Origin: Adineta vaga | Taxonomy: Eukaryota; Animalia; Rotifera | DNA length: 64,000 nucleotides | Assembly: GCA_021613535.1 (NCBI GenBank) | Contig: CP075494.1 | Location: 16,430,001 to 16,494,000, forward strand | Reading direction: 5' to 3' | In this document: positions 490 through 62,700 of the stretch, in pieces | How positions within the stretch are numbered: the first letter of the stretch is position 1 | Layout: each line of letters starts with the position of its first letter | Notes under the pieces: generated by a model | Told to the model about the DNA's origin: nothing | Database searches by the model: none | What the model saw: only the letters and a program-made list of their open reading frames with translations | Made by a program: the position numbers and the translations under genes

Positions 490-519
490 CACCGCACACC
501 CACGCCCATATCCTCCAAT
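490..519. repeat. Telomere-repeat palindrome family, degenerate right half
   Basis: CACCGCACACCCACGCCCATATCCTCCAAT; its end resembles the end of the copy at 58312-58362. Confidence 0.4.
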
Positions 520-721
520 TTTTACATTGATTCTTCCTTCGATTTAGCATCACACTACCTATTTTCTAAAGCATTTTGAATCTCTTTCGACAAGTTGATA
601 ACTGGTCTATTCAAACGTTTCTTCTATTTAAAAGAAAAAGCAAGACGAGCAAATTTTCACTGTGTTATTCATCATTTCAATCAAAAACAAGTTCATTTCA
701 CTCGATAAACAAAGTAATAAA

Positions 722-3700
722 ATGGCACAAAGAAAATGGTAGAGTTGTTTCACAATTTGATTACTCCAACATATATCGTTTTTACTTTTGTAGGGGAAGA
801 AACTTTCAGAGTTCGGGAGGAAATATTCACTGTTCGTTCGAAAACGTGCTCACAAGAGACGCTGCTATGACTATTGGGAACAATATCCAAAGAATATTGG
901 GTATTAGGTATTTCAATACTGAAGAAATGGCTTCAGAAGTACCATCACCATATAAGTTCAATTGCAGCCGTCGGGATGCAAACAGAATGCGCGATGAACT
1001 TTGGAAAATTACTACAGATATATATGCATTTGTTTGGTTTTCAATACAGGACAATTCATTGGATTCTATTTATGATTCAGCTTCACAACGAGTCGAAAAT
1101 TCGAATAAGGTCAAAGAGTATTCCATGTTCTGCTATTTTGGTTCCATGTACTCATACGACACTTTTGTTACTCATAGCGAACGTTACCCAACTGCGCAAG
1201 ATCTTTACATTATCAAGTTGAAAAAAGAACCTGACACGATACGTATTGTATCGAGAAATAAATCCAAACAAATGTTTATTCCAATAAAATGGTTAAAAAA
1301 TGAAATATTGGTCAAAACAAAAAAACAACCATGTGTCGTTTTAATGCTAAAACATTCTGTGATAATAAAAAGAGCAATTTCAACTAGCGGGCCATATTCC
1401 TATGAAAGGTAATATATCAAGATTTTTCAATAGATGAAGAGAGAATCGATGAGAAAATAGTCAAATAAGCATAGAAAGTTATCTAAAAGCAACAGTAAGT
1501 GATAAAGAAAAATAGACATGCGCTAAACCCAAACTATTTGGGAGTTTCAGTTTGGATTATTCATTGACATCAAAATTATGTGAGATTAAAATCCTTTCCA
1601 CTTTTTTAGTTTTATGTGAGTGCAAAGTATGATTTCCATTCGAGCATTGAAGTTTGAATCAGAGATCGGAGATTTTGGTATCTGAGTTACATGAAAATGT
1701 AAAACCAAAACGTATATAACCAAACTTAATACCAAATCTAAACGCAATCGTTTGGATTTAGTGCATACTTAAAGAGAAACTTTTAGATCACAGTAGAATT
1801 GATCTGGTTGAAACAAATTTACTTCAGAAAACTCTAGTGCGATATTTAAAGGTATTTCTTTTAGAAAAATTGACAATTCTATCTTGTAGAGTCTTCATTT
1901 TTAGTTTTTAGATTTCGAGTTAATAAGTACGATGGATTCGATAGTTCGTAGAAAAGACTCAAACGATCTTCTTTGCTCATCTTTTTATTTTGTTTTTCTA
2001 GAAAATCTGGATCTGTCGATATCTTCATCAAGATTTTCTCTGTCTGAAAAATACAGTAATTAAGAATTGATCAGTATAGTCAAATATATTTTACACTTTT
2101 ACGGTTTTATCTTCAGAGCAAAAAGATCTTATAGCCAAAATTCTTAAACGTCGCGCTTTTTCCAGATGATATGTTATAACAGATTTTTTTATCATCAGAT
2201 ATTAATCATCGGAGGATAGAATATGTTTGAGGAAAATGTCATCTGTTGTTATTCGATAATTAATAATAAATGATCTATGAAGCAATATAGATTAAGTTTG
2301 TAATAGATCTTTGTAATTGGTACTCAAATCAAGTGATATGCAAATATATATATATATATATATTTATTTTATTTTACTTTTTGTTTTAGGTCATGTGAGA
2401 CGATTGATAGTGAATTCGAAAGAATAGTATCAAAAAGTTCTGATATTCTTCTTTCATTTTTTGATGTTCAACATACATGGGCATTTCTTGAAGAGCTCAC
2501 ACGCAGTAGTAATGGAAGACGTAATAAATTCAACATAAAGTTCGTTACACTCCAGCAAGAATTTGCAGAAAATGATGAAAAATTATTCGACTTGCCTTCA
2601 TCAACATCAACCAAAAAGCAATATGCTTTTCATATTCTCGATTCCATGGGTTATGTATTTCAAGATAAATATTCGAAAGAACTTCATGAGCGATTTATTG
2701 CATCGGATGACGAATCATTCAATCAGATGTGCTATTTTTTCAAGGATAGACTTGAAGAAAATCATTGTTATGATATGCATTGTGACTTAAAGAATTATAT
2801 AAAGAGAAACTGTGAAGAAAAACAGTCTTCTGAAACGAAAGTTTATTCAGTTGGCTCTGTTGTAGTGACACCATTGCGACTCCTCTTTCAAAAACGAGAA
2901 ACAACAGCTGGAAATCGAGCATTGCGAATATTGCAAACTAATGATGAGGATATGTTTTTATTGGTCCGAATCCGTGAAGAAGATGGTGAAGAGTTAAAAA
3001 ATTTTGATTCTTCTGTCCGATGTCGAATTAAATCAAAAATGTTACATGGACTTAAAGTTCTAGGAAGAACTTATCGTTTCGTTGGAGCATCAAACAGTCA
3101 GTTACGAGAAATGTCATTTTGGTTTATAGCTACTTATCATCAATCAGTTGAAGACATATGGAAGATCTTTGGAAATTTTTCAACTATACAAAATGTTGCA
3201 ACTTATATCGCCCGAATTGGTTTATATTTTACAAAATCGATTGAAACACAAGTAAATAGATTTGTTTGCTTGTTTGTTGGAAATATTTTACCTGATCATA
3301 TTTTCATAGATGATTTTTCGATTCGAAAAAGATTTCTCATCAGATATGAGTTATGTTGTAACAATGATCGATGATATCGAAACGGATGACAAAAAGTATT
3401 GTTTTACTGATGGAATCGGAAAAATGTCCTGGGGTGTAGCCGGTTTAGTTGCAATAAAATTAAATCTGAAACTAAACTATAAAGATGATATTCCAGCAGC
3501 TTACCAAGTTCGCATTGCTGGTTGTAAAGGAATGTTAGCCATTGATCCTGAATCAACATTGGATGAATATTATATTAAAATTAGACCATCAATGAAAAAA
3601 TTTGATTCCGATAATTGGCAGTTAGAAATATGTGAATATAGTCAACCACGTAAGTTTTGATTATTTCGATATGTCACATATTGTTGAATAAGCTGATCTT

Positions 3701-7482: not shown

Positions 7483-7537
7483 CTTGAGGGTGTGGGTGTG
7501 GATATTGCATCTATCTAACACCTACACCCACCCTTAA
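7483..7537. repeat. Telomere-repeat palindrome, spacer class A
   Basis: CTTGAGGGTGTGGGTGTGGAT-ATTGCATCTATCTAA-CACCTACACCCACCCTTAA. Confidence 0.9.
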
Positions 7538-7615: not shown

Positions 7616-7665
7616 GAGTGTGAGTGGGTGTGGCTAAAGCAGAAAGACATCCACACCCATACCCT
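7616..7665. repeat. Telomere-repeat palindrome, B-like spacer
   Basis: GAGTGTGAGTGGGTGTGG-CTAAAGCAGAAAGACAT-CCACACCCATACCCT. Confidence 0.75.
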
Positions 7666-7789
7666 ATTATACTATGAAATATTTCAGTCTTCATTGTTGA
7701 AGCAGGCTCATCCGCTTGAGTTCTATAGTTTTATTTATATTAATACATAAAAATTTACAGAAGACATATACGAAACAAGATGTATGTTT

Positions 7790-9518: not shown

Positions 9519-9590
9519 AGGGTGTGGGTGTGCGTATCTCTTCTTCTTTCACACCCACACCCACCCACTCACACCCACACCTTCAAGATG
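9519..9590. repeat. Telomere-repeat palindrome, class B spacer in reverse orientation
   Basis: AGGGTGTGGGTGTG-CGTATCTCTTCTTCTTTC-ACACCCACACCCACCCACTCACACCCACACCTTCAAGATG. Confidence 0.9.
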
Positions 9591-15261: not shown

Positions 15262-15347
15262 ATCTTGAGGGTGGGTGTGGGTGGGTGTGGGTGTGGGTGT
15301 GGGTAAAGGTACGTATCTTTCTCTTATGTATACACACTCACACTCTT
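15262..15347. repeat. Telomere-repeat palindrome with the longest G arm
   Basis: ATCTTGAGGGTGGGTGTGGGTGGGTGTGGGTGTGGGTGTGGGT...TACACACTCACACTCTT. Confidence 0.9.
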
Positions 15348-15874
15348 ATTTCACAGATTTTAAGAATCATTGTTAAGCATCTGAACCCACTTGGAAGCTT
15401 TCAGACGGCTAGAAAATCATTTTCTAGAGTCAGCGAAAGTGCATCTTTTTTAGGGTGCATTTATAGGACGTTTTTCTTTTCGCGTCGGTTAAAGTTCGAA
15501 AATAAAACATACCTGGTGACTTTTCTGTCTATTTTAACATCAAATAAGACCTTTTCAGCTGAATAAATGCGCTGTAAAAGATAAGAATTTTTGCAAAAGG
15601 ATTCTTTGCTCTGCGCTTATTTTCATTATTTGCTGATAGATACAATTGATGCGAAGATAACATCAATTTCGACATGATTAAATGTCCTCTCTCATATATA
15701 AATTGAAAGCATTCTGTTATGCGACTATCAAGTTGAGTATCAAGATCTCAGTTCGATGGTTTCGTAAATAGTATTGACGAAATGGTCATCTTCCATTGAC
15801 TTATATTCATATTTGTAGATAACTACTCAACATACTTTACATTTATTTTTTCAAATAAAAAACCTAGTTGAAGT

Positions 15875-18800
15875 ATGATATGTGATTATGAACAAGTTGG
15901 TACAAATAACATTATTCAGCAGAGTGAATTGTTAACAGAAGAAGCGACATCAGTCTACAATGAGCTATCATCTAAAAAACAACAGCAAAAACATGTATTA
16001 CACAAGTATGATTAAATCTATTACATGAATATATTCTATACAGTTCTAATGTATCAATTTGTTTAGTCTATATCTATATTCAATTTATAAGATAGCAAAA
16101 AATAAATGGTCCTATGCTATCTTGTTATTGGTACTTGTAATAGGTACAAGTGCTGCTGTATTTATTAGTCATCAAACAAAACAAGATCAAAACGAAATCA
16201 TCGTGAAAAGTCAAAGTATAGTTGTTTTTTTTTAATAATTAATAATAAATTAAGTAATATCGAACAAACCGTTTTGATAAAATAATCATTTGGTTGGATG
16301 TAGAGTGGAACTCTAAATGATCAGATTGCTTGAATAGATCGAATCTGTTTACATGTGTATAACATTAAACGTTTCCATTCACAACTTCTAGAGCAATGAT
16401 TAATAAAAAAGTAGAATATATAACCTAGAGACAAACGCTTTGAAATCGACGGAGAACCCATGGTCAGGCGCCATGAACTTTTGACAGGATTTTAGCAAAC
16501 GATCCTCGCCCGTATTAGAATCTAACCATAACGAGACGATGTAACAGCTATTCAAAGCTAGTAAACCACAAAAGATAATCTATACTGTAACATAGCGCAA
16601 CCCTAAACACAACTTCCATCGGTTACGGGCCGCATGGGACGACCTGAGTATTATCTTATCTTATTCACAAAGCAATTCATATAGTATCGGAAAAAAGGAA
16701 TATTTTGTTTTATTACAGAAACATCCTCAAATGAAGAATGGTACGATAATTATCAATCAGACGAAGAAGATTCGCGTGAATATTATTCAAAAAATTCTCG
16801 ATCTTCTTCTGTATGTATTTTTCTAATAATTATATAATTACTATTTTACTTTTAAGAAAGTTAAATCACCTAAAGATATTGGATATTTTAATGTTTATAT
16901 TCGTGAAAATTTACATGAAAATAGTCGACGAGCATTTCAGCGATATCAATTTCCAGCTGCTCGTTATAATCGTCATGAATTTCGTACGAATTTCTTTTCT
17001 GTTATTATTCAATTTAAATAGTATTTAATTTAGCTATAAAGGGTCCATTTCTGAATTTTCAATTGACATTGTCGATATTTGTACATCCACGTACACGTCA
17101 AACAATTATTTATTCATCAAAAAATGAAGGTCACTATATGATTATTTTCAAAATAACATTCACTGAAAAAGAAAATATTTTTTTATTTTTTTAGTTTATC
17201 TTTTACCTGCATTATATAATAAACATGAAGAAATCTTTTCAATTGGTGAACTTATTGCTTCTGGATATGCTACATTTACACCAGATGATATTAAAATGAA
17301 AACATCTTATGATATAACAAATCTATTTCATGAAAAACGATGTAAGTCTATTCTTTCGCTTTAATGAAGTTTTTCAAATAGTTCGATCTTTCTTTCGAAT
17401 AGTGATGCAATCTGGTTTACCAAAGATAAATCCATTCACAGGTGCTTTTACCGATGGAATTTATACAAAACTTCGATCCTCTTTCGTATCAAAACATTCA
17501 GAAAAGAGAACATACAATAGAATTTCTAATGACGAAGATTATAATCGTCAAGATTCATCATATTCACGTAATCCATATTATTCTAAACCACGATCACGAT
17601 CGCGCTATGACGGTAATATACAAATGATAAATATATCATCTTATAATACAAAGAAGTATTTTGTTCGTGAAATTAAAGCTGTATATTACTAATTTCAACT
17701 TGAATTAGATATTTTCTTAATAATAGGAGAAATTTGAGAACAAATCCAATCAAAACTGAGGTTGCAGAATTCTCAATGATTGTGATAAATAAAACCTATT
17801 GATTCGAATCAACTATGAATTTCTACTAGATTTGTTATAGAATTCGATTAAATCTGTTTATAGGAGGTATTTTCAAATGAGAATGTCTTTTATTTTATAG
17901 ATGTTTCGACAAAAAAAACAACACGAACTACAACAACATCAAACGATATACCAATTGAACTCAAATTCGTTGAAGAAATTAAAATGTCTGATGTAATGAA
18001 GCATCTTAAGAAGTTGCAAAGCATCGCATCTAGTAACAATAATATTCGAGCAGCATTCACAAATGGTTTTGACGAAACAATGAATTATATATACGAATAT
18101 CTTTCAAAAAACACAAATTTTAAACTAACAAGAAGATCATTTCAGACAAGAAAGTTCTTACTTGGCGCAAATCCAAAATTAACAACATCAATTGATGGTG
18201 TCATAAAAGATCGTAATTATTCATTAGTTTTGAGTGAATCAGAATTTTTTTTCATGGACTATTCGAGAGCAATCGATATGGATGAATTTATTCCAATCAA
18301 TATTATTCCAAATTTAGGGTGTAATGAAGAAGATTGGATTGCTGCAAATCCTTCTCCATCTAGTCAAGTAGCATTGGTTAAACGAGGTGAATGTAATTTT
18401 ATTCAAAAAACTGATTTGGCATTGAAATATGGTGCTCGTGCTATTTTGATATACAACGACGGTGTAACTGCTGATCGTACTCTAGTTATTGGTACTCTAA
18501 CCGCTAGTACTAATGAGATGCCAGCATTATTCTTGTCATATTATCTCGGTCAAGAACTGGTTACAGCTGCTCAAAAATCATCAAGTAGTGTTATGGTTCG
18601 TCTTTCTATCTACATTAGAGATGACTCGATTGGTACTACTGAAAATATTTGTGCTGATACATTGACAGGCGATCCATCTCAAACAATTATTATCGGTGGT
18701 AGTAGTGATAGTACAAGTTTCGGACCAGGACTTAATGACAATGGTAATTAATCGACTTGAATTCGTTTCTTTATGTCTTTTTTATTTCAGGTAGTGGTAT

Positions 18801-19539
18801 TTCAGGTATACTCGCTTTAGCTAAAACTCTTTTTCGGCTTTTGAAAACTTCCACGTATACTGAATACAAATATCGAGTCCGATTTTGCTGGTGGACTGCA
18901 GCTAACGAGGGTGTGGGTTCAACGGCTTATATAAACGAAGCAAAAAATTCTATTAGTGTTGGTGAACGTCTTAATGATCATTTACTCTATCTTAATTACG
19001 ATGCGATTGGTTCACCAAATTTCAAGTTTGGAATTAGAGATGGTGAGTCGCTTGTTGATAGCTTTCCAGACGAAGTCTTTTCAGGTATTCAAAAAATCAC
19101 GAATCTTTATAAAGATTGGTTCATTAAAAATAATTTGCCATGGGATCTTACTGATATTGATGACAATACTGGTGATACACCATTTTATTCAGAAAATATT
19201 GTTGTTGGAGGTTTATTCAGTGGTGAGACTGATATTAAAACACAAGAACAACGTGATCGATATGAAGAAATGCTTGGAAACGGTCGTGGTGGAATAGCAA
19301 ATACCCCTTTTGATCCATGTCAGGGTTTACCATGTGATACGATACAAAATGTTAATGTCTTTGCTCTTGAAAAGATGATCAAAGCAGCTGCTTATGCCTT
19401 GGAGTATTTGGGTAGACAAGATGATTTGAAAGCTTGGCTTTCTTCATCTTTTCCAACTCAACGATTAGCTAAAGCATCAGTTAAAAAAGAAAAGCACATG
19501 TCACACAAAGGGTGCTCTAATGGAAGATGTCGTACATAA
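15875..19539 (+). CDS. PA-domain M28 (aminopeptidase S/Y-like) homolog, probably membrane-anchored and catalytically dead
   Basis: PA domain (ALVKRGECNF..K...A...GA.AILIYN) and M28 landmarks (NICADT..GDP, GPGLNDNGSG, VRFCWW, YLNYD, DPC) in ORFs 17984-19539 joined by a short intron. Upstream exons (ATG 15875, hydrophobic WSYAILLLVLVIGTSAAVFI) are inferred to belong to the same gene. Confidence 0.75.
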
Positions 19540-20123
19540 GAATATTTTCTAATCAACATATTATGTTTTATTCAAGAATAAGTATTTAAAAAAATTGCGA
19601 TTGATTGATTTTTTAATAAATTTTACTTTTCATTTGATAATGAATCAAGTTATTTTTGTTATTTGAAACCAGCATCAATGTAGGATTTATGAGGAGAGAG
19701 ATGAGCCACGCTGGAATGTCTGTGCATCAAAATTATCGTGAAAAATCTTTTCGATGACTTGTTTTTCAATGAATTAATGTGTTTGTCTCTATCAGGACTA
19801 CAGTCGTAAGCAACTTTATAAATATATAAGAGGTATATGATACATACAAACATTAGTATTTGCATAATAGATCAACGATATTAATAACTATAGAGATTGG
19901 GTTTTTACTATTTGATAGTCCTCTTGACTAGGTACAAAGCCAGAAATTTGCGAAATCACAAAACTACTGACCATTTCAGAATGGAGTTTGTGCGTATGTT
20001 GAGGCTTGTTTCAGACAAAGTTTTGATAGAAAACTACGGTCTAGATTCAAACTGATATCAGATTTAAAACCAGCGTTAAGAACTAAATCAATCCATTAGG
20101 GTCCGACGGGATTATCCCGATCC

Positions 20124-20190
20124 CATCTTGAGGGTGCGGGTGTGGGTACTACATTTATCTAACACCTATACACCGCACCCACCCTCAAAT
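20124..20190. repeat. Telomere-repeat palindrome, spacer class A
   Basis: CATCTTGAGGGTGCGGGTGTGGGT-ACTACATTTATCTAA-CACCTATACACCGCACCCACCCTCAAAT. Confidence 0.9.
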
Positions 20191-20358
20191 AGTCTTGTTT
20201 TGACAGTCGACTGCAACAGATCTTTTTCCTTTTTTCGTTCTTCATGTGCTTATCGATGAATCACGATGACAACTTCATTATCGTTATGTCAATAAACACG
20301 TGTATCGTATGACAAAAATAAAGAACGCTTTTACTTTGTTAAGAAATTGTTTTTTAAG

Positions 20359-22185
20359 ATGGAAAGCACAAAACGTATTAAGTGTGAAAAAACGTCGTTT
20401 AATTGTTTACCAAATGAAATTCTTTTGATGATATTTGAGTATCTATCTGCAAATGATATTATTTATACATTCTTTTTTCTAACTGAACGATTAAATAATT
20501 TCTTATTACACAATCAACGTTATTTCAACTATTTGGAATTACCAACAGCAGATTTAGATATATGGGAAATCATTTTATCAATAATTGGTTCAAAAATCAA
20601 ATGTTTAAATATAACAACAACTCATTTATTCTTTCCGTTAAAATATTTTCCAAATCTAAAATCATTAATGATTTCTTCATTATACGGTTTATCAGAAGAG
20701 AAATTGACATATATCATTGAAAATGATCTATTTAAAAATTTATCTTCATTAAAAATCAAACAAGAAAAGATATTTCCCAATCCATATCTTCCAGATAATG
20801 TTATTTGTGGAGATAAGATTTTGAAAAACGTTTTTAATGAAAATAATTCATTAGAAATATTTGAATATTCATTAATGATAAGACCATCTGTCATTTATTC
20901 AAATACAAATAAACTTCAAATTAATTTTAATTTTAATTTACATTCATTAACATTAGCATTAAGTTGTTTTGAACACATATTTGCTGTGATTCAATTTACA
21001 CCAAATTTAAAATATTTCAATGTTAAAACACAAATACCTTTTGCGAATGAACAACCACCAATTGAGAAAACTAATGTTAAATTAAACGAATTACATTTAA
21101 CATTGAATAAACCTCCTAATAACGATGGTAATATTCATGTAGTAATTGATGAAATAAAACAATTTTCATCGTCATTAGTTTGTTTATCACTCGATTTAGT
21201 TGATTATTCTGTTCGAGGTATAAATGAATTTCCATTTGATAGTTTACAACTTCCACAATTATTGAAATCAATGAAAGAACTGAAAGCATTTCATCTCTAC
21301 ACTAAACAATCTTCTTTTCAATATCATAATAATATTGATTTATCACAATTTAAAGATCAATATTGGTTTAAACAGAATCCATCATTTGGAATGCATGATG
21401 ATTATATTTATACATTACCATTTCATTTCAATAATATTTATGATTGTTTTCAAGATTTTAGTGAAATTAAATCAAATGATTGTAAGATTTTAGAGAGCAA
21501 TTCTCGAATATGGTCTAAAGTTAAATCTATTCAATTGCCTAGAAGATACGGATATGATAGAAATTTTGTAAAAGAACTCAAAATGAAAATGCCAAAGTTA
21601 AATTTAATTAAATTTAATGCTTATGGGACTTCATCTAAAATTCAAACAGATGATTCATCATCTGAAAATATAGATGTTACATTAGATAATGTAAAGACTA
21701 TTCAATTTATTCGAGGATCGATTGAAAATGAAAAGGATTGGATTATTTCTTCATTACCAAATTTAAAACATTTGGTTTTATCTTATACAGAAATACCTTC
21801 AAAAGATAGTCAATTAACTCGAATATTAAATGAAAATATTCAACGATTAGACATAGATGCATATTGTCAAATTGAACAATTAATGGAAATGAATTCTGTT
21901 TGCTTTTCAAATGTTGAAAATATTAATTTTTATTTAAATGATAGTTCAAAAAGTCCAGAATGGTATGCAGAGATTGTTTTGAAAATATTAAAAAAATTTC
22001 AAAATTTAAAGATAATGATGATTTGTATTGCTCATCGGTGTCACGGATATGGAGAATTATCTTTTCCTGAAAAAAATTTGACCAAAATTATTGAATATTT
22101 CAATATGAATGAAATGCATAAAAACTATCAAGTGGAATATTTGAAAGGGTACACTTTATTTTTAAACATGTCTTTTCAAAATTAA
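20359..22185 (+). CDS. F-box protein with LRR-like repeats
   Basis: N-terminal FNCLPNEILLMIFEYL F-box; repeated FPNLKSL/TPNLKYF/LPNLKHL motifs; YTLPF motif; single exon. Confidence 0.85.
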   Translation: MESTKRIKCEKTSFNCLPNEILLMIFEYLSANDIIYTFFFLTERLNNFLLHNQRYFNYLELPTADLDIWEIILSIIGSKIKCLNITTTHLFFPLKYFPNLKSLMISSLYGLSEEKLTYIIENDLFKNLSSLKIKQEKIFPNPYLPDNVICGDKILKNVFNENNSLEIFEYSLMIRPSVIYSNTNKLQINFNFNLHSLTLALSCFEHIFAVIQFTPNLKYFNVKTQIPFANEQPPIEKTNVKLNELHLTLNKPPNNDGNIHVVIDEIKQFSSSLVCLSLDLVDYSVRGINEFPFDSLQLPQLLKSMKELKAFHLYTKQSSFQYHNNIDLSQFKDQYWFKQNPSFGMHDDYIYTLPFHFNNIYDCFQDFSEIKSNDCKILESNSRIWSKVKSIQLPRRYGYDRNFVKELKMKMPKLNLIKFNAYGTSSKIQTDDSSSENIDVTLDNVKTIQFIRGSIENEKDWIISSLPNLKHLVLSYTEIPSKDSQLTRILNENIQRLDIDAYCQIEQLMEMNSVCFSNVENINFYLNDSSKSPEWYAEIVLKILKKFQNLKIMMICIAHRCHGYGELSFPEKNLTKIIEYFNMNEMHKNYQVEYLKGYTLFLNMSFQN

Positions 22186-22878
22186 ACTTTATATTTTATC
22201 AAAATATTTTTAATCAAGACGATTTATTGACGCTAGGACAATTTGTCATACTAATATAATTCGATTAACTTAGAAATATATGAATACGATAACTATTAAG
22301 TTTATAGAATATGTTCTATAGAACTAAGATTTATTGATGCAACTTAATTGTTCGAATAGATTATTTATTAGTTAAAGATTTAGTAATATATCAAGACTTT
22401 TGCCCACCATCACGCTTTATCGTCTCCTTATCATCGCTGATCTCTTGGATTACGTACGGAAAAATATTTAAGTAGATACCGCCGCTAGACTGAGTAGAAG
22501 AAAAACACAGTTAACCGCAGTCTGTATATTATCTCGAATAATATCATTATTTGAATCAATTTATTTTTAAAACATGACTGAAATTTCTAAGGTTATTTTT
22601 CTAATAAGATTATATCACTAAAACTTATTATTTAAAAGTTATCGATTGAAACTAAATTTACCATCATCTTACAACATGAAAAGTTAGAAAAAATAACAGT
22701 TTGACGATTCGCAACGTCTAATAAACCTTTTTTTTGTTTCTTGAAGTGCTTCATAAATCCATTAAGGATTTATATCTTCGTTAAGTGTAATCAAAATGAA
22801 ATTCTTTATACTTTGGAACTTCATAAATCTTTTTCTACGTTTATGAGACCATCATAAACGCTTTTATCGTTGGTTATT

Positions 22879-22947
22879 ATTGAGGGTGTGGGTGTGGGTG
22901 TGGGTGTGCGCGATGAAAGAGAAGACACGCGCAAACATCCACACCCG
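22879..22947. repeat. Telomere-repeat palindrome, spacer class B
   Basis: ATTGAGGG(TGTGGG)3TGTGCGCG-ATGAAAGAGAAGACA-CGCGCAAACATCCACACCCG. Confidence 0.9.
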
Positions 22948-22964
22948 AATTATATAATTTACCG

Positions 22965-23376
22965 AAATCAATTGGTTCTTCTATTGAAGATCGTATTTGT
23001 AGCGAAGATCTTTTACATGATTTTCGTCTATCATCAGGTTTTCTTTATCAAGTTGAATTTCTAACAAAAGATGTTCATATTGATACTTGGATTTGTAATG
23101 GAACAGAAATTTCACCACATTCTATGATACTCTATTGACAAAAATTGTTGTTCATGGTCAAAATCGAAAAGAAGCAATTGAAAAAATGTGTTACGCTCTT
23201 CAACAAACAAATCATTTTGGAATTCAAACAAATTTAGATTTTCTTTGTCAATTAATTTTTTTTTGGAATATCGGTATTTCACCATTTGGCCCAATGGATG
23301 CGATTATGCATTTCGAATTACAAATCATTTAGTTGGAAATTATGAAAATACAGCTGGAATTGAATGTAACTTTGGA
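22965..23376 (+). pseudogene. Urea carboxylase fragment (end of biotin carboxylase domain plus start of carboxyltransferase domain), frameshifted and internally deleted
   Basis: SIEDRICSEDLLHDFRLSSG..IDTWICNGTEISP / YDTLLTKIVVHGQNRKEAI..GIQTNLDFL / WNIGISPFGPMD / YAFRITNHLVGNYENTAGIEC matches the urea carboxylase pattern (YAEDP..F.PS.G; YDPMLAK.IV.G; GI.TNLDYL; W..GVPPSGPMD..FR.AN..VGN...A.LEC). Confidence 0.85.
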
Positions 23377-23382
23377 TGAAGA

Positions 23383-23431
23383 ATCTTGAGGGTGTGGGTC
23401 TAGCTATACTCTTAACCCACACCCACACCCT
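23383..23431. repeat. Telomere-repeat palindrome, spacer class C
   Basis: ATCTTGAGGGTGTGGGT-CTAGCTATACTCTTA-ACCCACACCCACACCCT. Confidence 0.9.
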
Positions 23432-23671
23432 ATATTCTTAATCTTGAAGTAATGAAAATGAAATTAATCATTCATTCTTCTATTCTTTGTCAGATCCGAC
23501 AACTTGTTTCTGTAAATGATGTTCTGTTCAAAATTCGATCAACGTAATATTTTTTTCATTTTTAATTTATGAATATAAAAAACAATACGAAACAATTTAG
23601 CTTTTTATCATACGAACCATGGAGAAAAAAGTCATTATGTGCTCCAGATTTGAAATTGATCTAGAGCGATT

Positions 23672-24696: not shown

Positions 24697-25002
24697 TCAA
24701 TATTGTCCTTTTAAGAATAACTTTTTTAAATAACGATTTGTTGAAAAACGTTAAAAATGTAAATGTAAAGAAAAAGACATGTTTTTCATCTTATCTTCAC
24801 TTTTCAAACAACGTCCGACCGAGCTGTTTTCTCTTTTTTTATTCTTATCTTTGTTATCACATGATAAAAACAAGGAAAAAAACCTTTTCCAAAGCAAAAG
24901 CTTAAGTCATCGACGAACTTTCATCTTAAAGAAAAAATAGATGTTATTGAACTATAAGGCGTAAGCGAGTTCGACATTAGCAGAGCATAACTGAATAAAA
25001 GA

Positions 25003-25064
25003 TGGGTGTGGGTATTGGTGAAAGAAGACAGGAGCACTCACACCCACACCCACACTCTCACCCA
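25003..25064. repeat. Telomere-repeat palindrome, spacer class B
   Basis: TGGGTGTGGGTATTGG-TGAAAGAAGACAGGAGCACTCA-CACCCACACCCACACTCTCACCCA. Confidence 0.85.
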
Positions 25065-25258
25065 AATTCGTTCGCTCGGCTTTTATCTTTATTTGTAGAT
25101 CATCGAGTTGACTTCGTCTGTTCTATACACTCAAAAGATAAGAGAAAGAAAGAAAGAAAATCAAAGAAAATAGAGAGAAGTAACATGTGCACACGATCAT
25201 TTCGTTTAGTATTACATACTAATACATCATAACGTTTGTTATTTAACGCAATCATACA

Positions 25259-43195: not shown

Positions 43196-43250
43196 ATCTT
43201 AAGGGTGCGGGTGTAGGTTAGGGAATATAGTCTAACCCACACCCTTTAAT
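43196..43250. repeat. Telomere-repeat palindrome, class C spacer in reverse orientation
   Basis: ATCTTAAGGGTGCGGGTGTAGGT-TAGGGAATATAGTCTA-ACCCACACCCTTTAAT. Confidence 0.85.
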
Positions 43251-46330: not shown

Positions 46331-46397
46331 ATTTGAGGGTGGGTGTGGGTATGGGTAAGAGTGAGGGAATGGCAGATATCAATATCCACACTCTCAA
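46331..46397. repeat. Telomere-repeat palindrome
   Basis: ATTTGAGGGTGGGTGTGGGTATGGGT...ATCCACACTCTCAA. Confidence 0.85.
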
Positions 46398-46790
46398 CTA
46401 TTTCATAGAACTAAAGGTGAGAGAATTGATGGTATACCGAAGAGTGCTTTTGATGATCGTTAATTATTATGCTGTTGGCATGTATGGTAAGAATTTTTAT
46501 GCATTAAAATTCGATATTTTTTTCGTTTCTGCAGACCGTGGTGATTACTTTGCCGATAATCCACTGAAAGCTTGTGGTTTTACGAGTTCAGATCCAAAAA
46601 ACAGAAATGCACATGTTATGTTCTATAGTACAGTCATTATAGGAAGATCTTATATATTAACAGCAGAAAAGAAAGATTTAATGGCAACACCAGAAGCCTT
46701 CTATTCAGTCATTGGAAAACATTCACACAAACAGAATATATCGTTTATCGTTATGGACATGCTGTTCCATATTTAAAAATAATCTACCAA
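46398..46790 (+). pseudogene. PARP (H-Y-E, tankyrase-like) catalytic-domain fragment
   Basis: LFHRTKGERIDGIPKSAFDDR (compare LFHGT..GFD), then GMY-intron-DRGDYFADNPLK, VMFYSTVIIG, YSVIG, and TEYIVYRYGHAVPYLKIIY; frameshifts; no 5' part. Confidence 0.8.
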
Positions 46791-47040
46791 GGTGGATAGT
46801 CGTTCCATTTGATTTATATCAAATAAACATAAAATTGCTTTTGGTGTATGTTTTTCGTAAGAAAAAAAATAAAACAAAAAATAGGAATTTCAACTGATTA
46901 GAATAAATAAAAAAGAGAGAAAAATCAATGGTTTTTTATTGCCTTGTGAATGTATATGTTACATAAGTGTAATATTCGAAAATTGAACTTAAATATTGTA
47001 TATGATGCGTTATAGCAAATTTCAGAAAATTCATTTCAGT

Positions 47041-47653: not shown

Positions 47654-47737
47654 ATTGAGGGTGTGGGTGTGGGTGTGGACATGAATACTGTACTCTAATC
47701 CGCTCTCACTTTTACACCCACACCAACTCTCGAGATG
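47654..47737. repeat. Telomere-repeat palindrome
   Basis: ATTGAGGGTGTGGGTGTGGGTGTGG...ACACCCACACCAACTCTCGAGATG. Confidence 0.88.
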
Positions 47738-48150
47738 CGATAAATACGTGACCTGTGGAAAATTTCTCGGGAAGTAAAATATGCACAGTAAGTTGGTAAA
47801 AATCAATCTAGAAAGAGAACGATAAGAAAGAAAATTGTTTTTTTTGCTGTTTGCATTTTCAGAAGAAATCATAAAAATCGTCGACAGCACATTTTTCAGA
47901 ATATTAACCACAGGGTGCACTTGAAAATGAAAAGAATTTGTTTAAAAATACAGATAAAAGCGCTCGGAAGTAGCAAAGAATAATTGGAATTTTCCAACAT
48001 ACTAAAACGTTATATAATAGAAACTGAGCTAGAACAGAATTATACACACAAAGAAATTCTGTATGTACACAAATACTCTTTTTGATAGACGTTCTAGCAA
48101 CAATGATATTACTATTGATTTTAATGTAGTGTAGCGAAATAATATATCCA

Positions 48151-56479: not shown

Positions 56480-56560
56480 CATCTTGAGGGTGGGTGTGGG
56501 TGCGAGTGTGAGTGTTGCTGAAAGAAGACAGGAGTACTCACGCCCACACCACACCCGCAA
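56480..56560. repeat. Telomere-repeat palindrome, spacer class B
   Basis: CATCTTGAGGGTGGGTGTGGGTGCGAGTGTGAGTGTTGC-TGAAAGAAGACAGGAGTACTCA-CGCCCACACCACACCCGCAA. Confidence 0.9.
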
Positions 56561-56567
56561 AGTTCAA

Positions 56568-58311: not shown

Positions 58312-58362
58312 TAGGGAGGTGAATGGGGATGTGGAGGAAGAGAATACCCATATCCTCAATAT
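58312..58362. repeat. Telomere-repeat palindrome family, degenerate
   Basis: TAGGGAGGTGAATGGGGATGTGG-AGGAAGAGAAT-ACCCATATCCTCAATAT. Confidence 0.55.
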
Positions 58363-59523
58363 ATGTATGATATTGAATTTTTGAAGTATTCTTTTGCAAC
58401 ATACTGTTCATTATTTTCCCTTTTCTGCTCTTACACTACTCAATTTTCTTTTCTTCGTATGCTTACCTGTTGTTTTTTACCTATCGGCCGTTGTTATTGT
58501 TTCACCTATAGTATTTGTTTGCTTGTTTTCCTTTCTGTGTTTCTCATATTGTAATCTACGCAGTTTTCCACTATCGTATCCTTTTTTTGATTTATACAGA
58601 TAAGAAATAATAATCAGTTTTTTCATACAAAATCAAAAAAAAAAGGAAAAACTATGAAACTGCGCTCACAGCATCTGATCGGGGATCACATTAACTGTAT
58701 GAATATTATAGTGGTTGTGCAACAGTACTATGAAGAGCTCGTAAATATCGATACAAAGGCTTGTAATAAGCATGAAAACCAGAGTGGTCGTAAAAATTGT
58801 AATATCTATTTACATTCTCAATCGATGCGTAGTTATAAGAATAAGGCTTTAAAATTATTATTGAAACATTTTTTTACCGTATTCGTATGCATGCCCAAAT
58901 GAAGTAATACATTCCTTCTGAGCATATTGAATGTCCTTTTCAGTTGCTGAATTCTTGATTTGATTGTTGATCTGATAAGAGTGTAGAACCGCCAGATTTT
59001 TAAAGGCTGATGCACGTTCGTCATTGGTAGTACTTGTAGCTAATGCTTGATTATAAGATTTAAAAGCATCGTCAAGACGACCTCGACGAACTACCGGCGC
59101 AGCATGTCCTTCTTGTTTCGCCCTAGCGAAAAGGCGTTTCCCTTCTGGCGGTGCTGCTCTGAAACAGTGGAAACCATCTTTATGTTATTGTTTGCAATTA
59201 CAATAGTATGCACGGAAAAAGAGAGACGTCAATGGTACGTTGAGTTATCAAAGAATGAAATCTTGCTCTGTTCTGTCCACACATATACCTGATGTCATAC
59301 ATCCATAAGAAAAATCGTTTTTTTTCCTTTTTATTTCTTATCGTTATTTGTTTTGTTCTCGAATAAACTTCTACTGCATTTTAACGAGTCTATTTCTTTC
59401 TATTACTGCTTGGATTTCATGCAGTAACTTGCAGCTTTAAGTTGTATATTTCTAGTTATTGTGAGCACTTTTGAACGAGGTAGCAACAAATCGCAAGGAG
59501 GAAAATCTCATTCGTTCACTACT

Positions 59524-59592
59524 CATTTTGAGGGTGGGTGTGGGTGTGGGTATTGCATCTATCTAACACCCACACCCACACCCCTCAAGATG
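59524..59592. repeat. Telomere-repeat palindrome, spacer class A (best-preserved copy)
   Basis: CATTTTGAGGGTGGGTGTGGGTGTGGGT-ATTGCATCTATCTAA-CACCCACACCCACACCCCTCAAGATG. Confidence 0.93.
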
Positions 59593-59708
59593 GTACTAAT
59601 AAGGATGAAAAAAGAATATACTATATATTTAAACAAGAATGAAAATTTAATTTTAATTCTAATGATAATTTTTTTATTTAATAAATTTCGAGTACAGTGG
59701 ATGTGAAT

Positions 59709-62700
59709 TCATTGAAAAACAAACCGAACATGGGGTTTGGGTGTGAATAAAGAGAAGCCATTCACACACACACGCACCCGACTAATAAAGATTTGTTTGA
59801 ATATTTTCATATATAATCGAGAAGGTAAAACGAATATGAAAAAAAAAAGAATTGATGGAATATATGTAGTCAAATAACCAATAAGAAAGAGCCATGGATC
59901 TCGATCTGATTTAATACAAGTTGAAATGAGTGAAAAAATCAAACGAGGTGTTTTAAGTAAAATAAGTATAATAGGTGAAATGAAAATATGTTTGTGACGA
60001 GCAAATTCTTTGTGAATATGTTGATAAAATGAATATTGAGTTTGAATATGAAATCGCGTACGAATTCGTATAATAATAATAATTAAAACGGAAATAATAT
60101 TCAAAAGAAATGGAAGAAAAAAATGCAAACTTTGTGAAATAATATTATATTTCTGAATGAATAATGAATATCTTGTAATACACCAAGTTCGTTTTTCGAT
60201 ATCATCATCAATTAAATCATGATAAAATATTTCTTGGATATTTGAAATACTCGATAAAACAAAAAGACTTATTGTTGTATATTTAGCTCGTTTTTTATTT
60301 CTATTTTCATGAAATTTCAAACCTTGAATAACACGTAATGCTCGATCAATTGTGACAAATAAATCTAACCAATCACTCCAATTAAGACAAACTCGAAGTA
60401 TATAATCTAAAGATTTACATTGATAATAATTCAAAGCTGAATTTTGAATTATTTTCGTTTGTATAAGAAGAAGAAAAAGAAATTTTAAAGAGAACGTAAT
60501 TAATATAAAAATCGATAAAATACATGTTGAAATTAAATAAATTCCACAACTAACTTTATAAATTTTTCCTTGAATAAATATTGTAAGAGAAATAATACTA
60601 TTGAAAATACCAATAATAAACATAAGAGCAATTGTAATAGTAGTAAATTTAATTGAATTTAATTGAGATTTTAAAATTGCTCTTGGATTAATTTGATAAC
60701 CTAGAATAGCATCGAGTGATATTGAAAAACTTTTTGTATTAAATTGACATGTTGAACCATAAAAACATTCTCGACAAAGACAAGCTGATATTGTTGGACA
60801 ATTAAGTTTGTCTTGAAAACAATATCCATCATTTTCACATTTATTATGATCATTTGAACAAACATATGTTCGATTCTGTTTGAATAATATACAATGAGTA
60901 GTACGATTCTTATTACAAATACAAATCTGAATTTCATCATAAAAACAAGACAAATCATTATGTTTTCTACATAATAATTGATATAATTTTATACGACGAA
61001 GAAGATGTTCTTTTATAAAACTCGAATTGAATAAATCTTTTGATGATACACATCGATTTATTTTCAAAATTGGCATTGTTGTATGTTGATCATTTGTTTT
61101 CATTGGATGTATCAAATAATAATTTGATTCTAATTGACCAACAACAAAATCATATTTATTTACAATTGTGTGAATATTAATTTGTGTTTCGTATGGATGA
61201 ATAATTTTAAATATTGTTGTAGGTGTTCCATCATTTGTGTCCTGTGTACCAAGAAAATGTAAAAAAATCATTGAAGGTATTGAAAGTTTTCTATCGAATG
61301 TAACTAATAAATTTGTTTTTAATGGTTGACATTGTTTACCACCAAAACCTTCTGGACATAAACACCGACCATCGGTAAATATACTTTTATCGTCAAGTAC
61401 TACACATTGACCACCATTGAAACAACCTCCAAAATCATTACAATGATAAATTTTAATATAGCATCGAGGACCAATACGACCTAGAGGACAAATACAGATC
61501 ACTTTTGGATAAACACTAATACATAATGAACCAGGAGCACAATTACAAACAAATAACTTTTGTTGTTTATTTTCACAGTGAATCCCCCACCAACCAGGTT
61601 GACAAAGACATATAAAAATATTTTGATCATTTCTTGTTTTTGCCATTGTACAAAATCCATTTCCATTACAATTTAATGGACACAAATTCTGAATATCAAA
61701 TGTTAACGGTGTTGGATTTGAAAGTTTAAGAGCAAGACGATGAACGGGTAAGAAAGGAAAATGAATTGGATAATACCAAGTTGATCGATATTTTACTTGA
61801 AATAGTTGTAAGATATAAGCATCAATACGAATATTATATTTCTTTGTAAAATTCTTTGGTCGAGAATTATAAAGTAAATAAATATACCATTTAGTATTAC
61901 ATATTAATTTTGGACTATGATATCGATAATCATGAGAAATAATTTCATTTTCATCTGTTATTAACATAAATACAAACATATACATATATCGCCAATCATA
62001 GACACTACGAATTTCAACAATTAATGTAACACGTTGATTTTGATATTGACAATTATTTCCATATGTACTTGGTGGACACATACATTTCCATGTTAAACCA
62101 TTTTTCCATACAGTTCTTATCATTATTCCACGATGACATAAATTATTAGAATTAGAATTTAATAATAAAGATTGTTTTTCTATTCCTAAATGACCAATAA
62201 GAAAAACACCAGCTGTTTTAATATATGTTAATCGTTCAAGATGATTTTCAATCATCAGTATATTTTTATTAGAAGAATTTTGACGTCCCGATGATAAAAT
62301 CAATTGAAGTTTATCGTCTATATAAGAATCACAGTGTCGAATTGTCTCTATATTAGTACATTCATCAGAATTCCAACATCGATAACGATTCCGTTTCTCT
62401 AATGAATATTTTAATCGACAAAATTCTTGTTCATCAGTTGCTCCTATACAATCGATTATATTATTATTTATATATTCAATAGATAGACAAAATAATTCAT
62501 GCGTTAATGGTGATATACACGAATGATGATTTAATGGACATTTAAATAAAAGATTATTACAATCTAATTCATCTTCTCCTTTTGGACAATTCCATACAAA
62601 ATTACAACGAGTATAATGATTATTACATGGCCATTCTTCACAATTAGTTTCATCACTTTGATTATGACCATCGATTAAAATTGGTATCATATCTTCAATA

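What the first reader, a model, noticed from the sequence alone, without database searches (positions are those of the whole stretch)
490..59781. Telomere-repeat palindromes divide the window into gene-sized modules: candidate eukaryotic cassette/junction system
Seen: about 16 recognisable copies (starts 7483, 7616, 9519, 15262, 20124, 22879, 23383, 25003, 32106, 43196, 46331, 47654, 56480, 58312, 59524, 59730) and about 3 very degenerate ones (490, 29291, ~35420-35480). Each is a 50-90 bp imperfect palindrome: (C)ATCTTGAGGG(TGTGGG)n - spacer - (CCCACA)nCCCTCAAGAT(G). The intervals between them hold 0-3 mostly unrelated genes or fragments. None lies in the ~4 kb of larger introns I could define. 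Known: TGTGGG and TGAGGG are the telomeric hexamers reported for Adineta vaga and Philodina roseola, and G-strand followed by C-strand is the geometry of an end-to-end telomere fusion. Short variable-spacer palindromes between unrelated genes also recall integron attC sites. Inference: these could be (a) recombination sites that shuffle gene modules, (b) scars where broken DNA ends received telomeric repeats and were rejoined, or (c) paired sites for a telomere-repeat-binding protein acting as boundaries. The conserved non-telomeric outer ATCT/AGAT and the recurrent spacers argue against pure telomerase addition.
Basis: partly seen in the sequence, partly recalled or inferred. Interest (0 to 1): 0.93.

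Follow-up and report, generated by a model that had tools for sequence, protein, structure and literature searches.

The report
Head-to-head telomere-repeat junctions between DNA fragments
In the gene-poor-to-mixed chromosome-end region of this bdelloid rotifer genome, short inverted telomere-repeat blocks mark the exact points where unrelated pieces of DNA, including broken pieces of genes, were capped with telomere sequence and joined tip to tip, so they read as scars of how these chromosome ends were assembled rather than as a mobile element or a gene-cassette switch.

Summary
The window (chromosome piece C5, 436-500 kb from its right end; the genome fits Adineta vaga) holds about 16 clear and 2-3 doubtful elements. 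Each reads G-arm (TGTGGG-type), spacer, C-arm. Genome-wide the G-then-C order gives 708 exact hits against 5 for the opposite order. The full cap ATCTTGAGGGTGKGGG occurs 480 times against 0 for a control, mostly in chromosome-end regions.

The arms are polar. The repeat next to the flank is TGAGGG, preceded by a fading ATCTT.

Homology to paralogs elsewhere in the genome stops at element edges: 7 of 65 block ends lie within 5 nt of an edge (0.4 expected), and no block spans an element. Four flanking pieces are truncated copies whose intact relatives run on elsewhere, including a biotin-carboxylase piece capped on both sides and a PARP piece.

I found no target-site duplication, no empty site and no arm covariation.

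Best reading (about 0.6): broken DNA ends were capped by telomerase and joined head to head, and later recombination used the arms. The recurrent 12-20 nt spacers remain unexplained.

A wild relative in moss metagenomes shows the same architecture. The scan's first readers noted the same elements in many other windows of this genome. I found no paper that describes them.

The parts
7483..7535 (.). Element E2: G-arm, family-A spacer (ATTGCATCTATCTA), C-arm
7616..7668 (.). Element E3: B-type spacer, 80 bp from E2
9519..9589 (.). Element E4: B-type spacer (reverse), long C-arm ending CTTCAAGATG. Paralog homology starts at 9587/9591.
15262..15341 (.). Element E5: 55-nt G-arm with full cap ATCTTGAGGG, decayed C-arm. 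A 93% identical copy on C6 starts at 15337.
15337..19688 (+). Module with a PA-domain gene. It is 93% identical to C6:13507251-13511619 and is bounded by E5 and by a decayed G-arm remnant at about 19688.
19694..20096 (.). Dispersed repeat R1 (76-90% copies on five chromosomes). It is present here between the remnant G-arm and E6 and absent from the C6 copy.
20124..20186 (.). Element E6: cap CATCTTGAGGG, family-A spacer variant ACTACATTTATCTA shared with the C6 copy (L023), C-arm ending CCCTC
20187..22450 (+). F-box gene module, 95% identical to C3:19412691-19414960. Homology begins at the first base after E6. The C3 copy has no element there.
22456..22878 (.). Dispersed repeat R2 (about 20 copies, 76-80%), cut off exactly where the G-arm of E7 starts. 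Other copies run on through that point.
22880..22946 (.). Element E7: four TGTGGG repeats, B-type spacer, short C-arm. An 86% copy lies at C1:17091032-17091104 next to a copy of the right flank.
22947..23368 (+). Internal fragment of a biotin-carboxylase (urea-carboxylase-like) gene, capped by E7 on the left and E8 on the right. The intact relative lies on C6 in a 915-aa open frame.
23383..23433 (.). Element E8: full cap ATCTTGAGGG, family-C spacer (reverse)
25001..25065 (.). Element E9: B-type spacer sub-variant GAAAGAAGACAGGAGCACTCAC, shared with E16 although both flanks differ
29291..29353 (.). Element E10: decayed. Only the C-arm at 29336-29353 is clear.
32106..32156 (.). Element E11: decayed G-arm (TTTGAGGATGTAGG), clear C-arm
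43196..43245 (.). Element E13: cap ATCTTAAGGG, C-like spacer. It lies 87 bp from an unrelated Tc1/mariner copy.
46331..46401 (.). Element E14: clear G-arm, decayed C-arm
46396..46924 (+). Truncated PARP catalytic-domain piece that starts at the right edge of E14. In the relative on C3 the domain starts 139 bp before the homology start, in a 464-aa open frame.
47654..47741 (.). Element E15: long unique spacer, right cap CTCGAGATG
56480..56562 (.). Element E16: cap CATCTTGAGGG. The paralog block 55952-56479 ends one base before it. Spacer as in E9.
58312..58365 (.). Element E17: very degenerate. Its spacer/C-arm type AGAATACCCATATCCTCAAT is also seen at U1611.
59524..59592 (.). Element E18: best-preserved copy, caps on both sides (CATTTTGAGGG ... 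CCCCTCAAGATGG), family-A spacer
59730..59780 (.). Element E19: decayed, B-type spacer, 140 bp from E18. It abuts the 3' end of the LDLa/EGF open frame, whose paralog homology starts at 59804-59821.

Best explanation
The elements are head-to-head interstitial telomere junctions. A DNA end, either a chromosome break or the end of a free fragment, is extended by telomerase. The added tract begins with a templated start, (A)(T)(C)TT-GAGGG, and continues as (TGTGGG)n. Two ends capped in this way are then joined tip to tip. This produces: fragment, cap, G-arm, short spacer, C-arm, cap, fragment. Repeating this, mainly near chromosome ends, builds subtelomeric DNA out of pieces with separate histories: whole genes, several genes, gene fragments and transposon scraps. 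Once in place, the thousands of similar arms serve as homology for later duplicative exchanges (break-induced replication or ectopic recombination) that switch partner inside an arm. That spreads spacer types to new flanks. After that the elements decay neutrally.

Shown here:
- the exclusive G-then-C order;
- the polarity of the arms and the fading cap;
- the breaks in paralog homology exactly at element edges;
- the truncation of four flanking pieces whose intact relatives run on elsewhere;
- one fragment capped on both ends;
- the concentration in subtelomeric regions;
- the decay series;
- the absence of transposon hallmarks;
- the same architecture in a wild relative.

Inferred, not shown:
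- that telomerase is the enzyme and that its RNA templates the ATCTTGAG start;
- that the joining is tip to tip rather than some other route;
- that spacer families spread by descent.
For: Geometry:
- The G-then-C order gives 708 hits against 5 genome-wide, 43 against 2 in 264 kb, and 7 against 0 in the window with 0 in shuffles.

Polarity of the arms:
- The outermost GGG run is preceded by TGA in 31 of 86 arms. Inner runs are preceded by TGA in only 6 of 107.
- Conservation before GAGGG fades outward: 90, 68, 44, 56, 54%, then none.
- Arm length varies from 12 to 55 nt.
- The only true chromosome end in hand (C4 left end) also has TGAG-type repeats at the inner end of its array.

Junction nature:
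- 7 of 65 paralog block ends lie within 5 nt of an element edge (0.40 expected, Poisson 2e-7).
- 0 of 18 elements lie inside a block (5.3 expected).

Truncation with an intact relative elsewhere:
- The F-box module starts at the first base after E6, while its 95% copy on C3 continues into other DNA without an element.
- Repeat R2 is cut at the start of E7, while four other copies run on.
- The biotin-carboxylase piece 22947-23368 lies between E7 and E8. Its relative has a full domain inside a 915-aa frame on C6.
- The PARP piece starts at the edge of E14. In its relative on C3 the domain begins 139 bp earlier, in a 464-aa frame.
- At the R2 junction the window has ATTGAGGG after the last shared bases, so part of the cap was added rather than inherited.

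Later exchange inside arms:
- E6 and the C6 copy share the left flank, the G-arm and the spacer, and diverge inside the C-arm.
- E7 and a C1 copy share the spacer and the right flank.

Location:
- On C1, full caps number 12 in 0-2.5 Mb, 4 in 2.5-10.9 Mb and 80 in 10.9-18.1 Mb.

Relative species:
- Contig L057 (73-78% identical to this genome) has an element whose right-flank homology starts 2 nt after its edge. Its left flank maps to another chromosome.

Literature:
- Short telomeric stretches are reported in bdelloid subtelomeres (PMC2861651), and telomeric repeats at deletion breakpoints in A. vaga lines (PMC13564844).
Against: - Plain fusion of two telomere tips predicts spacers of any length, including zero, and of random sequence. 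Here spacers are never near zero, are typically 12-20 nt between clean arms, and more than half fall into a few recurrent families. E9 and E16 share a spacer sub-variant with no shared flank.
- B-like spacers also occur in wild relatives. That could mean the spacer is templated or functional rather than inherited.
- Only 9 of 86 edges abut long open frames, against 37% at random positions. Breaks are therefore either not random with respect to genes, or most truncated genes have decayed or been lost.
- The telomerase RNA of this animal is unknown, so the templated-cap idea is untested.
Confidence: 0.6

Rival explanations
1. A family of very small hairpin-type mobile elements (MITE or foldback-like, or a retro-copied hairpin RNA). 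Their terminal inverted repeats happen to be telomere-like. They are preferentially captured at double-strand breaks as filler, so they end up between unrelated DNA ends.
For: - Spacers fall into discrete families and sub-families that are shared by copies with unrelated flanks on both sides.
- Spacer size is roughly constant.
- The whole element (arms plus spacer) is sometimes the only unit of homology between two places.
- Both outer ends carry the same inverted motif, as terminal inverted repeats would.
Against: - No target-site duplication is visible at well-defined ends.
- None of the 33 paralog blocks shows an empty site or spans an element.
- The outermost bases are the least conserved, the opposite of transposon termini.
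- Arm length varies four-fold.
- A 420-bp gene fragment capped on both sides would need two insertions plus loss of both outer flanks.
- No matching transposase is present. The only one in the window has unrelated ends.
Confidence: 0.13
2. A site-specific recombination system, with sites analogous to integron attC sites. A dedicated recombinase recognises the palindromes and moves or swaps the modules between them.
For: - Units of duplication are bounded by the elements.
- The palindromes are imperfect, with a conserved outer core and a variable centre.
- Exchanges switch inside the arms.
Against: - Modules are not gene cassettes. They include a 420-bp internal gene fragment, a truncated PARP domain, transposon scraps and 80-140-bp pieces.
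- Paralogs of a module often lack an element at the same boundary.
- The arms show no covariation that would preserve a folded site.
- Many copies are decayed.
- No tyrosine or serine recombinase was seen among the 20 largest open frames.
Confidence: 0.1
3. Functional chromatin or transcription boundaries. The elements would be paired sites for a telomere-repeat-binding protein (as Rap1 sites act in yeast promoters and barriers), or G-quadruplex/hairpin blocks that stop read-through between tightly packed genes.
For: - The elements lie in non-coding DNA far more often than chance: 9 of 86 edges abut long frames, against 37%.
- RNA-derived contigs cover the F-box gene but not E7 or E9.
- The same architecture, including the cap, is present in a relative with about 75% DNA identity.
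Against: - The elements are nearly confined to subtelomeric regions, while genes everywhere need boundaries.
- There is a continuous series of decay to unrecognisable halves.
- They bracket dead gene fragments.
- They have no fixed position relative to starts or stops of open frames.
- The RNA evidence comes from low-depth contigs only.
Confidence: 0.08

Closest known systems
Interstitial telomeric sequences left by telomere healing and end-to-end fusion (for example the head-to-head array at the human chromosome 2 fusion site, PMC9413910, and neotelomeres and telomere-spanning fusions in cancer genomes, PMC10705422)
   Same: - The species' own telomeric repeat lies inside a chromosome.
- The orientation is G-strand then C-strand.
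- The flanks are unrelated on the two sides.
- Truncated sequence abuts the repeats.
   Different: - There are thousands of very short junctions (arms 12-55 nt), about one per 5-6 kb of subtelomere, rather than a rare event.
- The first repeat is stereotyped, with a cap (ATCTTGAGGG).
- A 12-20 nt spacer of recurrent sequence sits between the tips.
Short telomeric-repeat stretches and Athena/Terminon additions described in bdelloid subtelomeres (as summarised in PMC2861651 and PMC3846280; the primary papers by Gladyshev and Arkhipova, 2007 and 2008, could not be read here)
   Same: - Same organism group and same subtelomeric compartment, rich in transposons and foreign genes.
- Same TGTGGG repeats.
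- Same idea that ends are healed and extended.
   Different: - Athena-type addition puts the repeats in one orientation on both sides of the retroelement, not head to head.
- The papers I could read mention short stretches of repeats. They do not mention palindromes, caps, spacers or coincidence with paralogy breaks.
De novo telomere addition at programmed or accidental breaks (ciliates, nematodes, yeast; cited in PMC13564844)
   Same: - Non-telomeric ends receive repeats.
- The junction shows short matches to the template and a characteristic first repeat.
   Different: - Here the capped ends do not stay ends. They are found joined to another capped end.
- The enzyme and its template are inferred only.
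Integron attC sites and bacterial REP-type palindromes
   Same: - Imperfect palindromes lie between unrelated genes.
- The outer part is conserved and the centre is variable.
   Different: - There is no structural covariation, no linked integrase and no one-gene cassettes.
- The elements bracket gene fragments.
- The arms are telomeric repeats of variable number.
Telomere-bearing transposons of ciliates (TBE1, Tel-1; from my own knowledge, not read here)
   Same: Telomere repeats are associated with inverted ends inside chromosomes.
   Different: - In the ciliate elements the telomere repeats sit at the extreme tips of a transposase-encoding element with a target duplication.
- Here the repeats face each other across a 12-20 nt spacer, and the non-telomeric cap lies outside them.

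Membership tests
Head-to-head interstitial telomeric junction (healing/fusion scar) | Built from the species' own telomeric repeat | tested here: met
   The arms are TGTGGG/TGGG/TGAGGG units. The same units form the terminal array at the C4 left end. TGTGGG is given as the A. vaga repeat in PMC8494291 and PMC7943196.
Head-to-head interstitial telomeric junction (healing/fusion scar) | G-strand tract followed by C-strand tract (tips facing), not the reverse | tested here: met
   708 against 5 genome-wide. 43 against 2 in 264 kb.
Head-to-head interstitial telomeric junction (healing/fusion scar) | The two flanks have separate origins, and homology to relatives ends at the repeat | tested here: met
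   7 of 65 block ends lie within 5 nt of an edge (0.4 expected). No block spans an element. The same holds in the relative's contig L057.
Head-to-head interstitial telomeric junction (healing/fusion scar) | The flank is a truncated copy of a sequence that continues elsewhere | tested here: met
   Four cases: the F-box module, repeat R2, the biotin-carboxylase piece and the PARP piece.
Head-to-head interstitial telomeric junction (healing/fusion scar) | Repeats added by telomerase from its RNA template | not testable with these tools
   Only indirect evidence: the fading cap and TGAGGG as first repeat. The telomerase RNA is unknown.
MITE / foldback transposon | Target-site duplication flanking the element | tested here: not met
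   No direct repeat is seen outside well-defined ends such as E18, E6, E16 and E4. By contrast, the mariner copy in the window shows its TA duplication.
MITE / foldback transposon | Empty sites: relatives with the two flanks contiguous | tested here: not met
   None among the 33 paralog blocks of the window. Allelic comparison was inconclusive, because the DNA contigs break at the elements.
MITE / foldback transposon | Terminal bases of the inverted repeats best conserved, with repeat length fixed | tested here: not met
   Conservation fades towards the outside. Arms are 12-55 nt long.
Integron-like attC recombination site | Folded structure maintained (paired positions co-vary) | tested here: not met
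   An element's own arms match each other no better than arms of other elements: score 0.259 against 0.244, median rank 0.43.
Integron-like attC recombination site | Cassettes are single intact genes, each with one site | tested here: not met
   Modules range from 80 bp to 9 kb. They hold 0-3 genes, or gene fragments.
Integron-like attC recombination site | Linked site-specific recombinase | tested here: inconclusive
   None among the 20 largest open frames of the window. The rest of the genome was not searched.
Athena / Terminon terminal retroelement addition | Repeats in the same orientation on both sides of a reverse-transcriptase element | tested here: not met
   The orientation here is inverted, and no reverse-transcriptase frame lies between the arms. 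A Penelope-type hammerhead-like motif does follow a long G array at the C4 end, but that is a different structure.
Known structured RNA family | Match to an Rfam model | tested here: not met
   No match at gathering thresholds. No tRNA found.

The most novel reading that the evidence does not exclude
Bdelloid subtelomeres are assembled by a dedicated pathway. Any linear DNA fragment, whether a shattered piece of chromosome or foreign DNA, is capped at both 3' ends by telomerase. A reverse transcriptase then bridges it onto another capped end. It would do so by copying a short RNA that carries a (CCCACA)n tail and then jumping to the second end, which would leave the constant 12-20 nt spacer families. 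If so, the palindromes would be a readable, datable log of every capture event. They would also be the physical mechanism behind the exceptional load of horizontally acquired genes near bdelloid chromosome ends.
Probability: 0.2. Interest if true: 0.92.

Novelty: new variant of a known kind. Interest (0 to 1): 0.78.

Why it matters
Bdelloid rotifers are the textbook case of animals that survive chromosome shattering. They also carry the highest known share of foreign genes, concentrated near chromosome ends. How DNA pieces get fixed there is an open question.

These junctions give a concrete, sequence-level answer that can be tested. Each one marks a place where a DNA end was capped and joined, with a recognisable start signature. 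They can therefore be counted, dated by their decay, and compared with the positions of foreign genes and with fresh breaks in irradiated lines.

There is also a practical point. The elements break short-read assemblies and inflate simple TGTGGG-density statistics used in earlier papers. The fading ATCTTGAG cap predicts part of the still unknown rotifer telomerase RNA.

Tried and rejected
- **Start codon in the cap.** I asked whether the ATG in CTCAAGATG opens genes. It does not: the median open frame is 10.5 codons, with none of 60 or more, the same as background.
- **Hairpin covariation.** None was found.
- **Rfam and tRNA scans.** Nothing was found.
- **Self-comparison of the 264 kb.** It was dominated by tandem repeats inside genes and gave no test of breakpoints: 4 of 368 ends near edges, as expected by chance.
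- **Reads (one 6,000-letter stretch).** All runs are contigs. The DNA contigs break or mis-join at the elements, so no clean presence/absence allele could be read. The RNA-like contigs are shallow. The 'joints' between elements are assembly-graph artefacts of the shared arms, not evidence of recombination.
- **True chromosome ends.** Of seven ends fetched, only the C4 left end carries a terminal array, so the cap could be compared with a real telomere junction only once.
- **More flanks of paralogs.** I did not try to read those letters by another route, so what lies at the paralog boundaries of E4, E5, E14 and E16 is unknown.
- **The look-up of encoding contigs for a window gene.** Nothing is on record.
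- **F-box loci of Adineta steineri, A. ricciae and Rotaria (about 90 kb).** They hold no element. These loci are not shown to be subtelomeric, so this says little.
- **Open frames abutting element edges.** Pfam scans of them gave only an LRR hit.
- **Literature.** Seven full-text searches and eight papers read gave no description of these palindromes. Two key papers (PMC1890498, PMC5850863) are not held.
- **Window position 490.** I rejected it as a bona fide element.

Full report
**Where the window is**

The window is G000:C5:16430001-16494000 in a 100.8-Mb assembly of six contigs. C5 is 16,930,519 bases long, so the window lies 436-500 kb from its right end. G+C is about 30%. The proteins have their nearest named relatives in the bdelloid rotifers Adineta and Rotaria. 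Size, six chromosomes and the TGTGGG repeat fit the published Adineta vaga chromosome assembly (PMC8494291). The open frames are a typical subtelomeric mix: RdRP, NHL, GPCR, P450, F-box, ankyrin, ADP-ribosyltransferase, GTPase, LDLa/EGF and a Tc1/mariner transposase.

Every listed coordinate carries a G-rich arm, a spacer and a C-rich arm.

- GGGTGTGG-N6-36-CCACACCC occurs 7 times in the window and never in 100 shuffles. The opposite order never occurs.
- In the window plus the 200 kb before it, a loose detector finds 43 G-then-C pairs against 2 C-then-G pairs. It also finds many half-decayed copies.
- Genome-wide, the strict pattern gives 708 matches against 5. The full cap ATCTTGAGGGTGKGGG gives 480 against 0 for the backwards control.
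- In the 264 kb, only 9 of the 43 recognisable elements meet the strict pattern. The genome therefore probably holds on the order of two thousand (my extrapolation).
- On C1 the caps number 12 in the first 2.5 Mb, 4 in the next 8.4 Mb and 80 in the last 7.2 Mb. The elements belong to the chromosome-end compartments.
- Position 490 is doubtful, because it is the end of a 170-bp dispersed repeat that is also found in chromosome cores.

First readers of this scan noted the same elements in many other windows of this genome.

**Anatomy**

- The arms are 12-55 nt long.
- The arms are polar. The GGG run nearest the flank is preceded by TGA in 31 of 86 arms, but inner runs in only 6 of 107, where TGT and GGT dominate.
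- Before GAGGG, the bases T, T, C, T, A are conserved at 90, 68, 44, 56 and 54%, and nothing is conserved further out. In the copies with the longest match the motif runs on as ACCATCTTGAGGG.
- Spacers between clean arms are typically 12-20 nt and never close to zero. More than half fall into recurrent types: A (ATTGCATCTATCTAACA), B (AAG-rich, GAAAGAAGA...), C (TTAAGAGTATAGTCTGAC) and D (TTAATTGTATAACTTGAC).
- The two arms of one element are no more complementary to each other than to arms of other elements. No hairpin is being maintained.
- There is no Rfam or tRNA match.
- The ATG in the cap does not open reading frames.

**The elements are junctions**

I searched the whole window against its own genome. 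That gave 33 distinct paralog blocks of 75% identity or more.

- Seven of their 65 ends lie within 5 nt of an element's outer edge (0.40 expected, Poisson 2e-7), and nine lie within 20 nt.
- No element lies inside a block, although 5.3 would be expected.

Sequence-level inspection shows what happens at these edges.

- *F-box module.* The module 20187-22450 is 95% identical to C3:19412691-19414960. Identity begins at the first base after the CCCTC of E6, and the C3 copy continues into unrelated AT-rich DNA with no element.
- *Repeat R2.* This repeat has about 20 copies. In the window it is cut exactly where the G-arm of E7 begins, while four other copies run on through that point. The window has ATTGAGGG after the last shared bases, so part of the cap was added there.
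- *Biotin-carboxylase piece.* The 420 bp between E7 and E8 hold positions 52-91 of a biotin-carboxylase C-terminal domain. The DNA relative on C6 has the whole domain inside a 915-residue open frame. This is an internal gene fragment with a cap on both ends.
- *PARP piece.* The open frame that begins in E14 carries a weak partial PARP match. DNA homology to C3 starts at the element edge. In C3 the PARP domain starts 139 bp earlier, in a 464-residue frame.

Two of these leads came from first-reader notes on this window. I tested both.

**Later exchanges switch inside the arms**

- The PA-gene module 15337-19688 has a 93% copy on C6. There it is followed directly by an element with the same spacer variant as E6. 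The two diverge inside the C-arm, and the window has an extra 440-bp repeat inserted next to a decayed G-arm remnant.
- E7 and a copy on C1 share the spacer and the right flank.
- E9 and E16 share a spacer sub-variant but neither flank.

**What it is not**

*Not an ordinary MITE.*

- There is no target-site duplication and no empty site.
- The outermost bases are the least conserved.
- Arm length varies four-fold.
- By contrast, the Tc1/mariner copy at 43332-44937 shows 200-bp inverted ends, a TA duplication and a 100% identical copy on C1.

*Not an integron-like cassette array.*

- Modules include dead fragments and scraps of 80-140 bp.
- Paralogs of a module may lack the element.
- There is no structural covariation.
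- No recombinase is seen among the 20 largest open frames.

A boundary or binding function is not excluded. The elements avoid long open frames: 9 of 86 edges abut one, against 37% of random positions. RNA-like contigs cover the F-box gene but not E7 or E9. However, the restriction to chromosome-end regions, the continuous decay series and the bracketing of gene fragments argue against a general role.

**Other genomes**

An exact-pattern scan of metagenome contigs returned about 19 low-G+C contigs, mostly from a few moss-type samples. They show the same architecture, including ATCTTGAGGG caps and B-like spacers. The high-G+C hits are unrelated bacterial hairpins.

Contig L057 is 73-78% identical to this genome in its coding parts. 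Homology of its right flank to three subtelomeric places starts 2 nt after the element edge, while its left flank maps to the core of another chromosome.

About 90 kb around F-box genes of A. steineri, A. ricciae and Rotaria hold no element. Those loci are not known to be subtelomeric.

**Mechanism**

The simplest account has four steps.

1. A DNA end is extended by telomerase. When the end is not telomeric, it pairs with the RNA a few bases 3' of the usual alignment site. The added tract therefore begins with some or all of ATCTT, then GAGGG, then TGTGGG repeats. This explains both the fading cap and TGAGGG as the first repeat.
2. A fragment treated like this on both 3' ends reads C-arm, fragment, G-arm.
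3. Joining capped ends tip to tip gives only G-then-C junctions.
4. The many arms then act as homology for duplicative exchanges.

The only true telomere I could inspect, at the C4 left end, also has TGAG-type repeats at the inner end of its array. Published work reports short telomeric stretches in bdelloid subtelomeres (PMC2861651) and telomeric repeats at deletion breakpoints in A. vaga lines (PMC13564844).

Three steps are inferences: that the enzyme is telomerase, that its RNA supplies the template, and how the ends are joined.

**What remains unexplained**

The spacer is unexplained. Its near-constant size and recurrent sequences do not follow from simple fusion. I see two untested ideas:

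- a few founder junctions were spread by recombination that starts in an arm;
- a short RNA with a telomere-complementary tail was copied by a reverse transcriptase, which then jumped to the second end.

**Limits**

- Reads were laid once, on 6,000 letters.
- No annotation or raw RNA reads were available, so intron placement and transcript ends are untested.
- I found no paper describing these palindromes in seven searches. Two key papers on bdelloid telomeres are not held.

**Verdict**

This is a new variant of a known kind: interstitial telomere scars, here made systematic, stereotyped and delimiting the building blocks of subtelomeres. Interest is 0.78.

Noticed in passing
window 43332-44937: Intact-looking Tc1/mariner transposon. 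It has 200-bp inverted ends starting CAGTGGTGGC, TA on both sides, and a 341-aa DDE_3/HTH transposase frame at 43585-44610 on the minus strand. A 100% identical copy lies at C1:5864355-5865962 in a chromosome core, which suggests very recent movement.
   Followed up: partly
L036 (G000:C4) 2549-2760 and 2915-2950: 2.4 kb from the C4 left telomere, a 170-bp TGTGGG array is followed by a sequence whose reverse complement reads like a hammerhead ribozyme core (CTGATGAG ... CGAAAC). This is as reported for Penelope-like/Athena elements. The motif recurs 220 bp further on.
   Followed up: no
window 345-510: A dispersed repeat of about 170 bp (77-85% identical) with copies in both chromosome cores and ends (C4:7.50 Mb, C6:3.95, 9.88 and 11.3 Mb, C2:2.73 Mb, C1:2.05 Mb). 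Its C-rich end was mistaken for a degenerate palindrome.
   Followed up: partly
window 45096-45345: Another short dispersed repeat in two parts (45096-45245 and 45289-45345). It has at least 15 copies at 81-88% identity on all chromosomes and is not adjacent to a telomere palindrome.
   Followed up: no
window 33847-34536 (minus strand): A 229-aa open frame with ADP-ribosyltransferase matches (Pfam ART and ADPrib_exo_Tox). It sits next to an NHL-repeat frame and is possibly a horizontally acquired gene.
   Followed up: no
window 2592-5155: Exons of an RNA-dependent RNA polymerase gene (Pfam RdRP, E 1e-25). A 69% DNA relative lies at C3:14880595-14882824.
   Followed up: no
G000:C3:18060372-18060414 and three other places: The five rare C-then-G hits are two caps back to back, with only 0-25 nt between them (for example CCCACACTCTCAAGATGGTTGTGGG). 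These look like fragments of almost zero length.
   Followed up: no
window 20001-26000, run X1: Short-read DNA contigs end or mis-join at the elements (loose ends at 20123/20166, 23390/23426 and 25039). The palindromes are therefore a systematic cause of assembly breaks in this species.
   Followed up: partly
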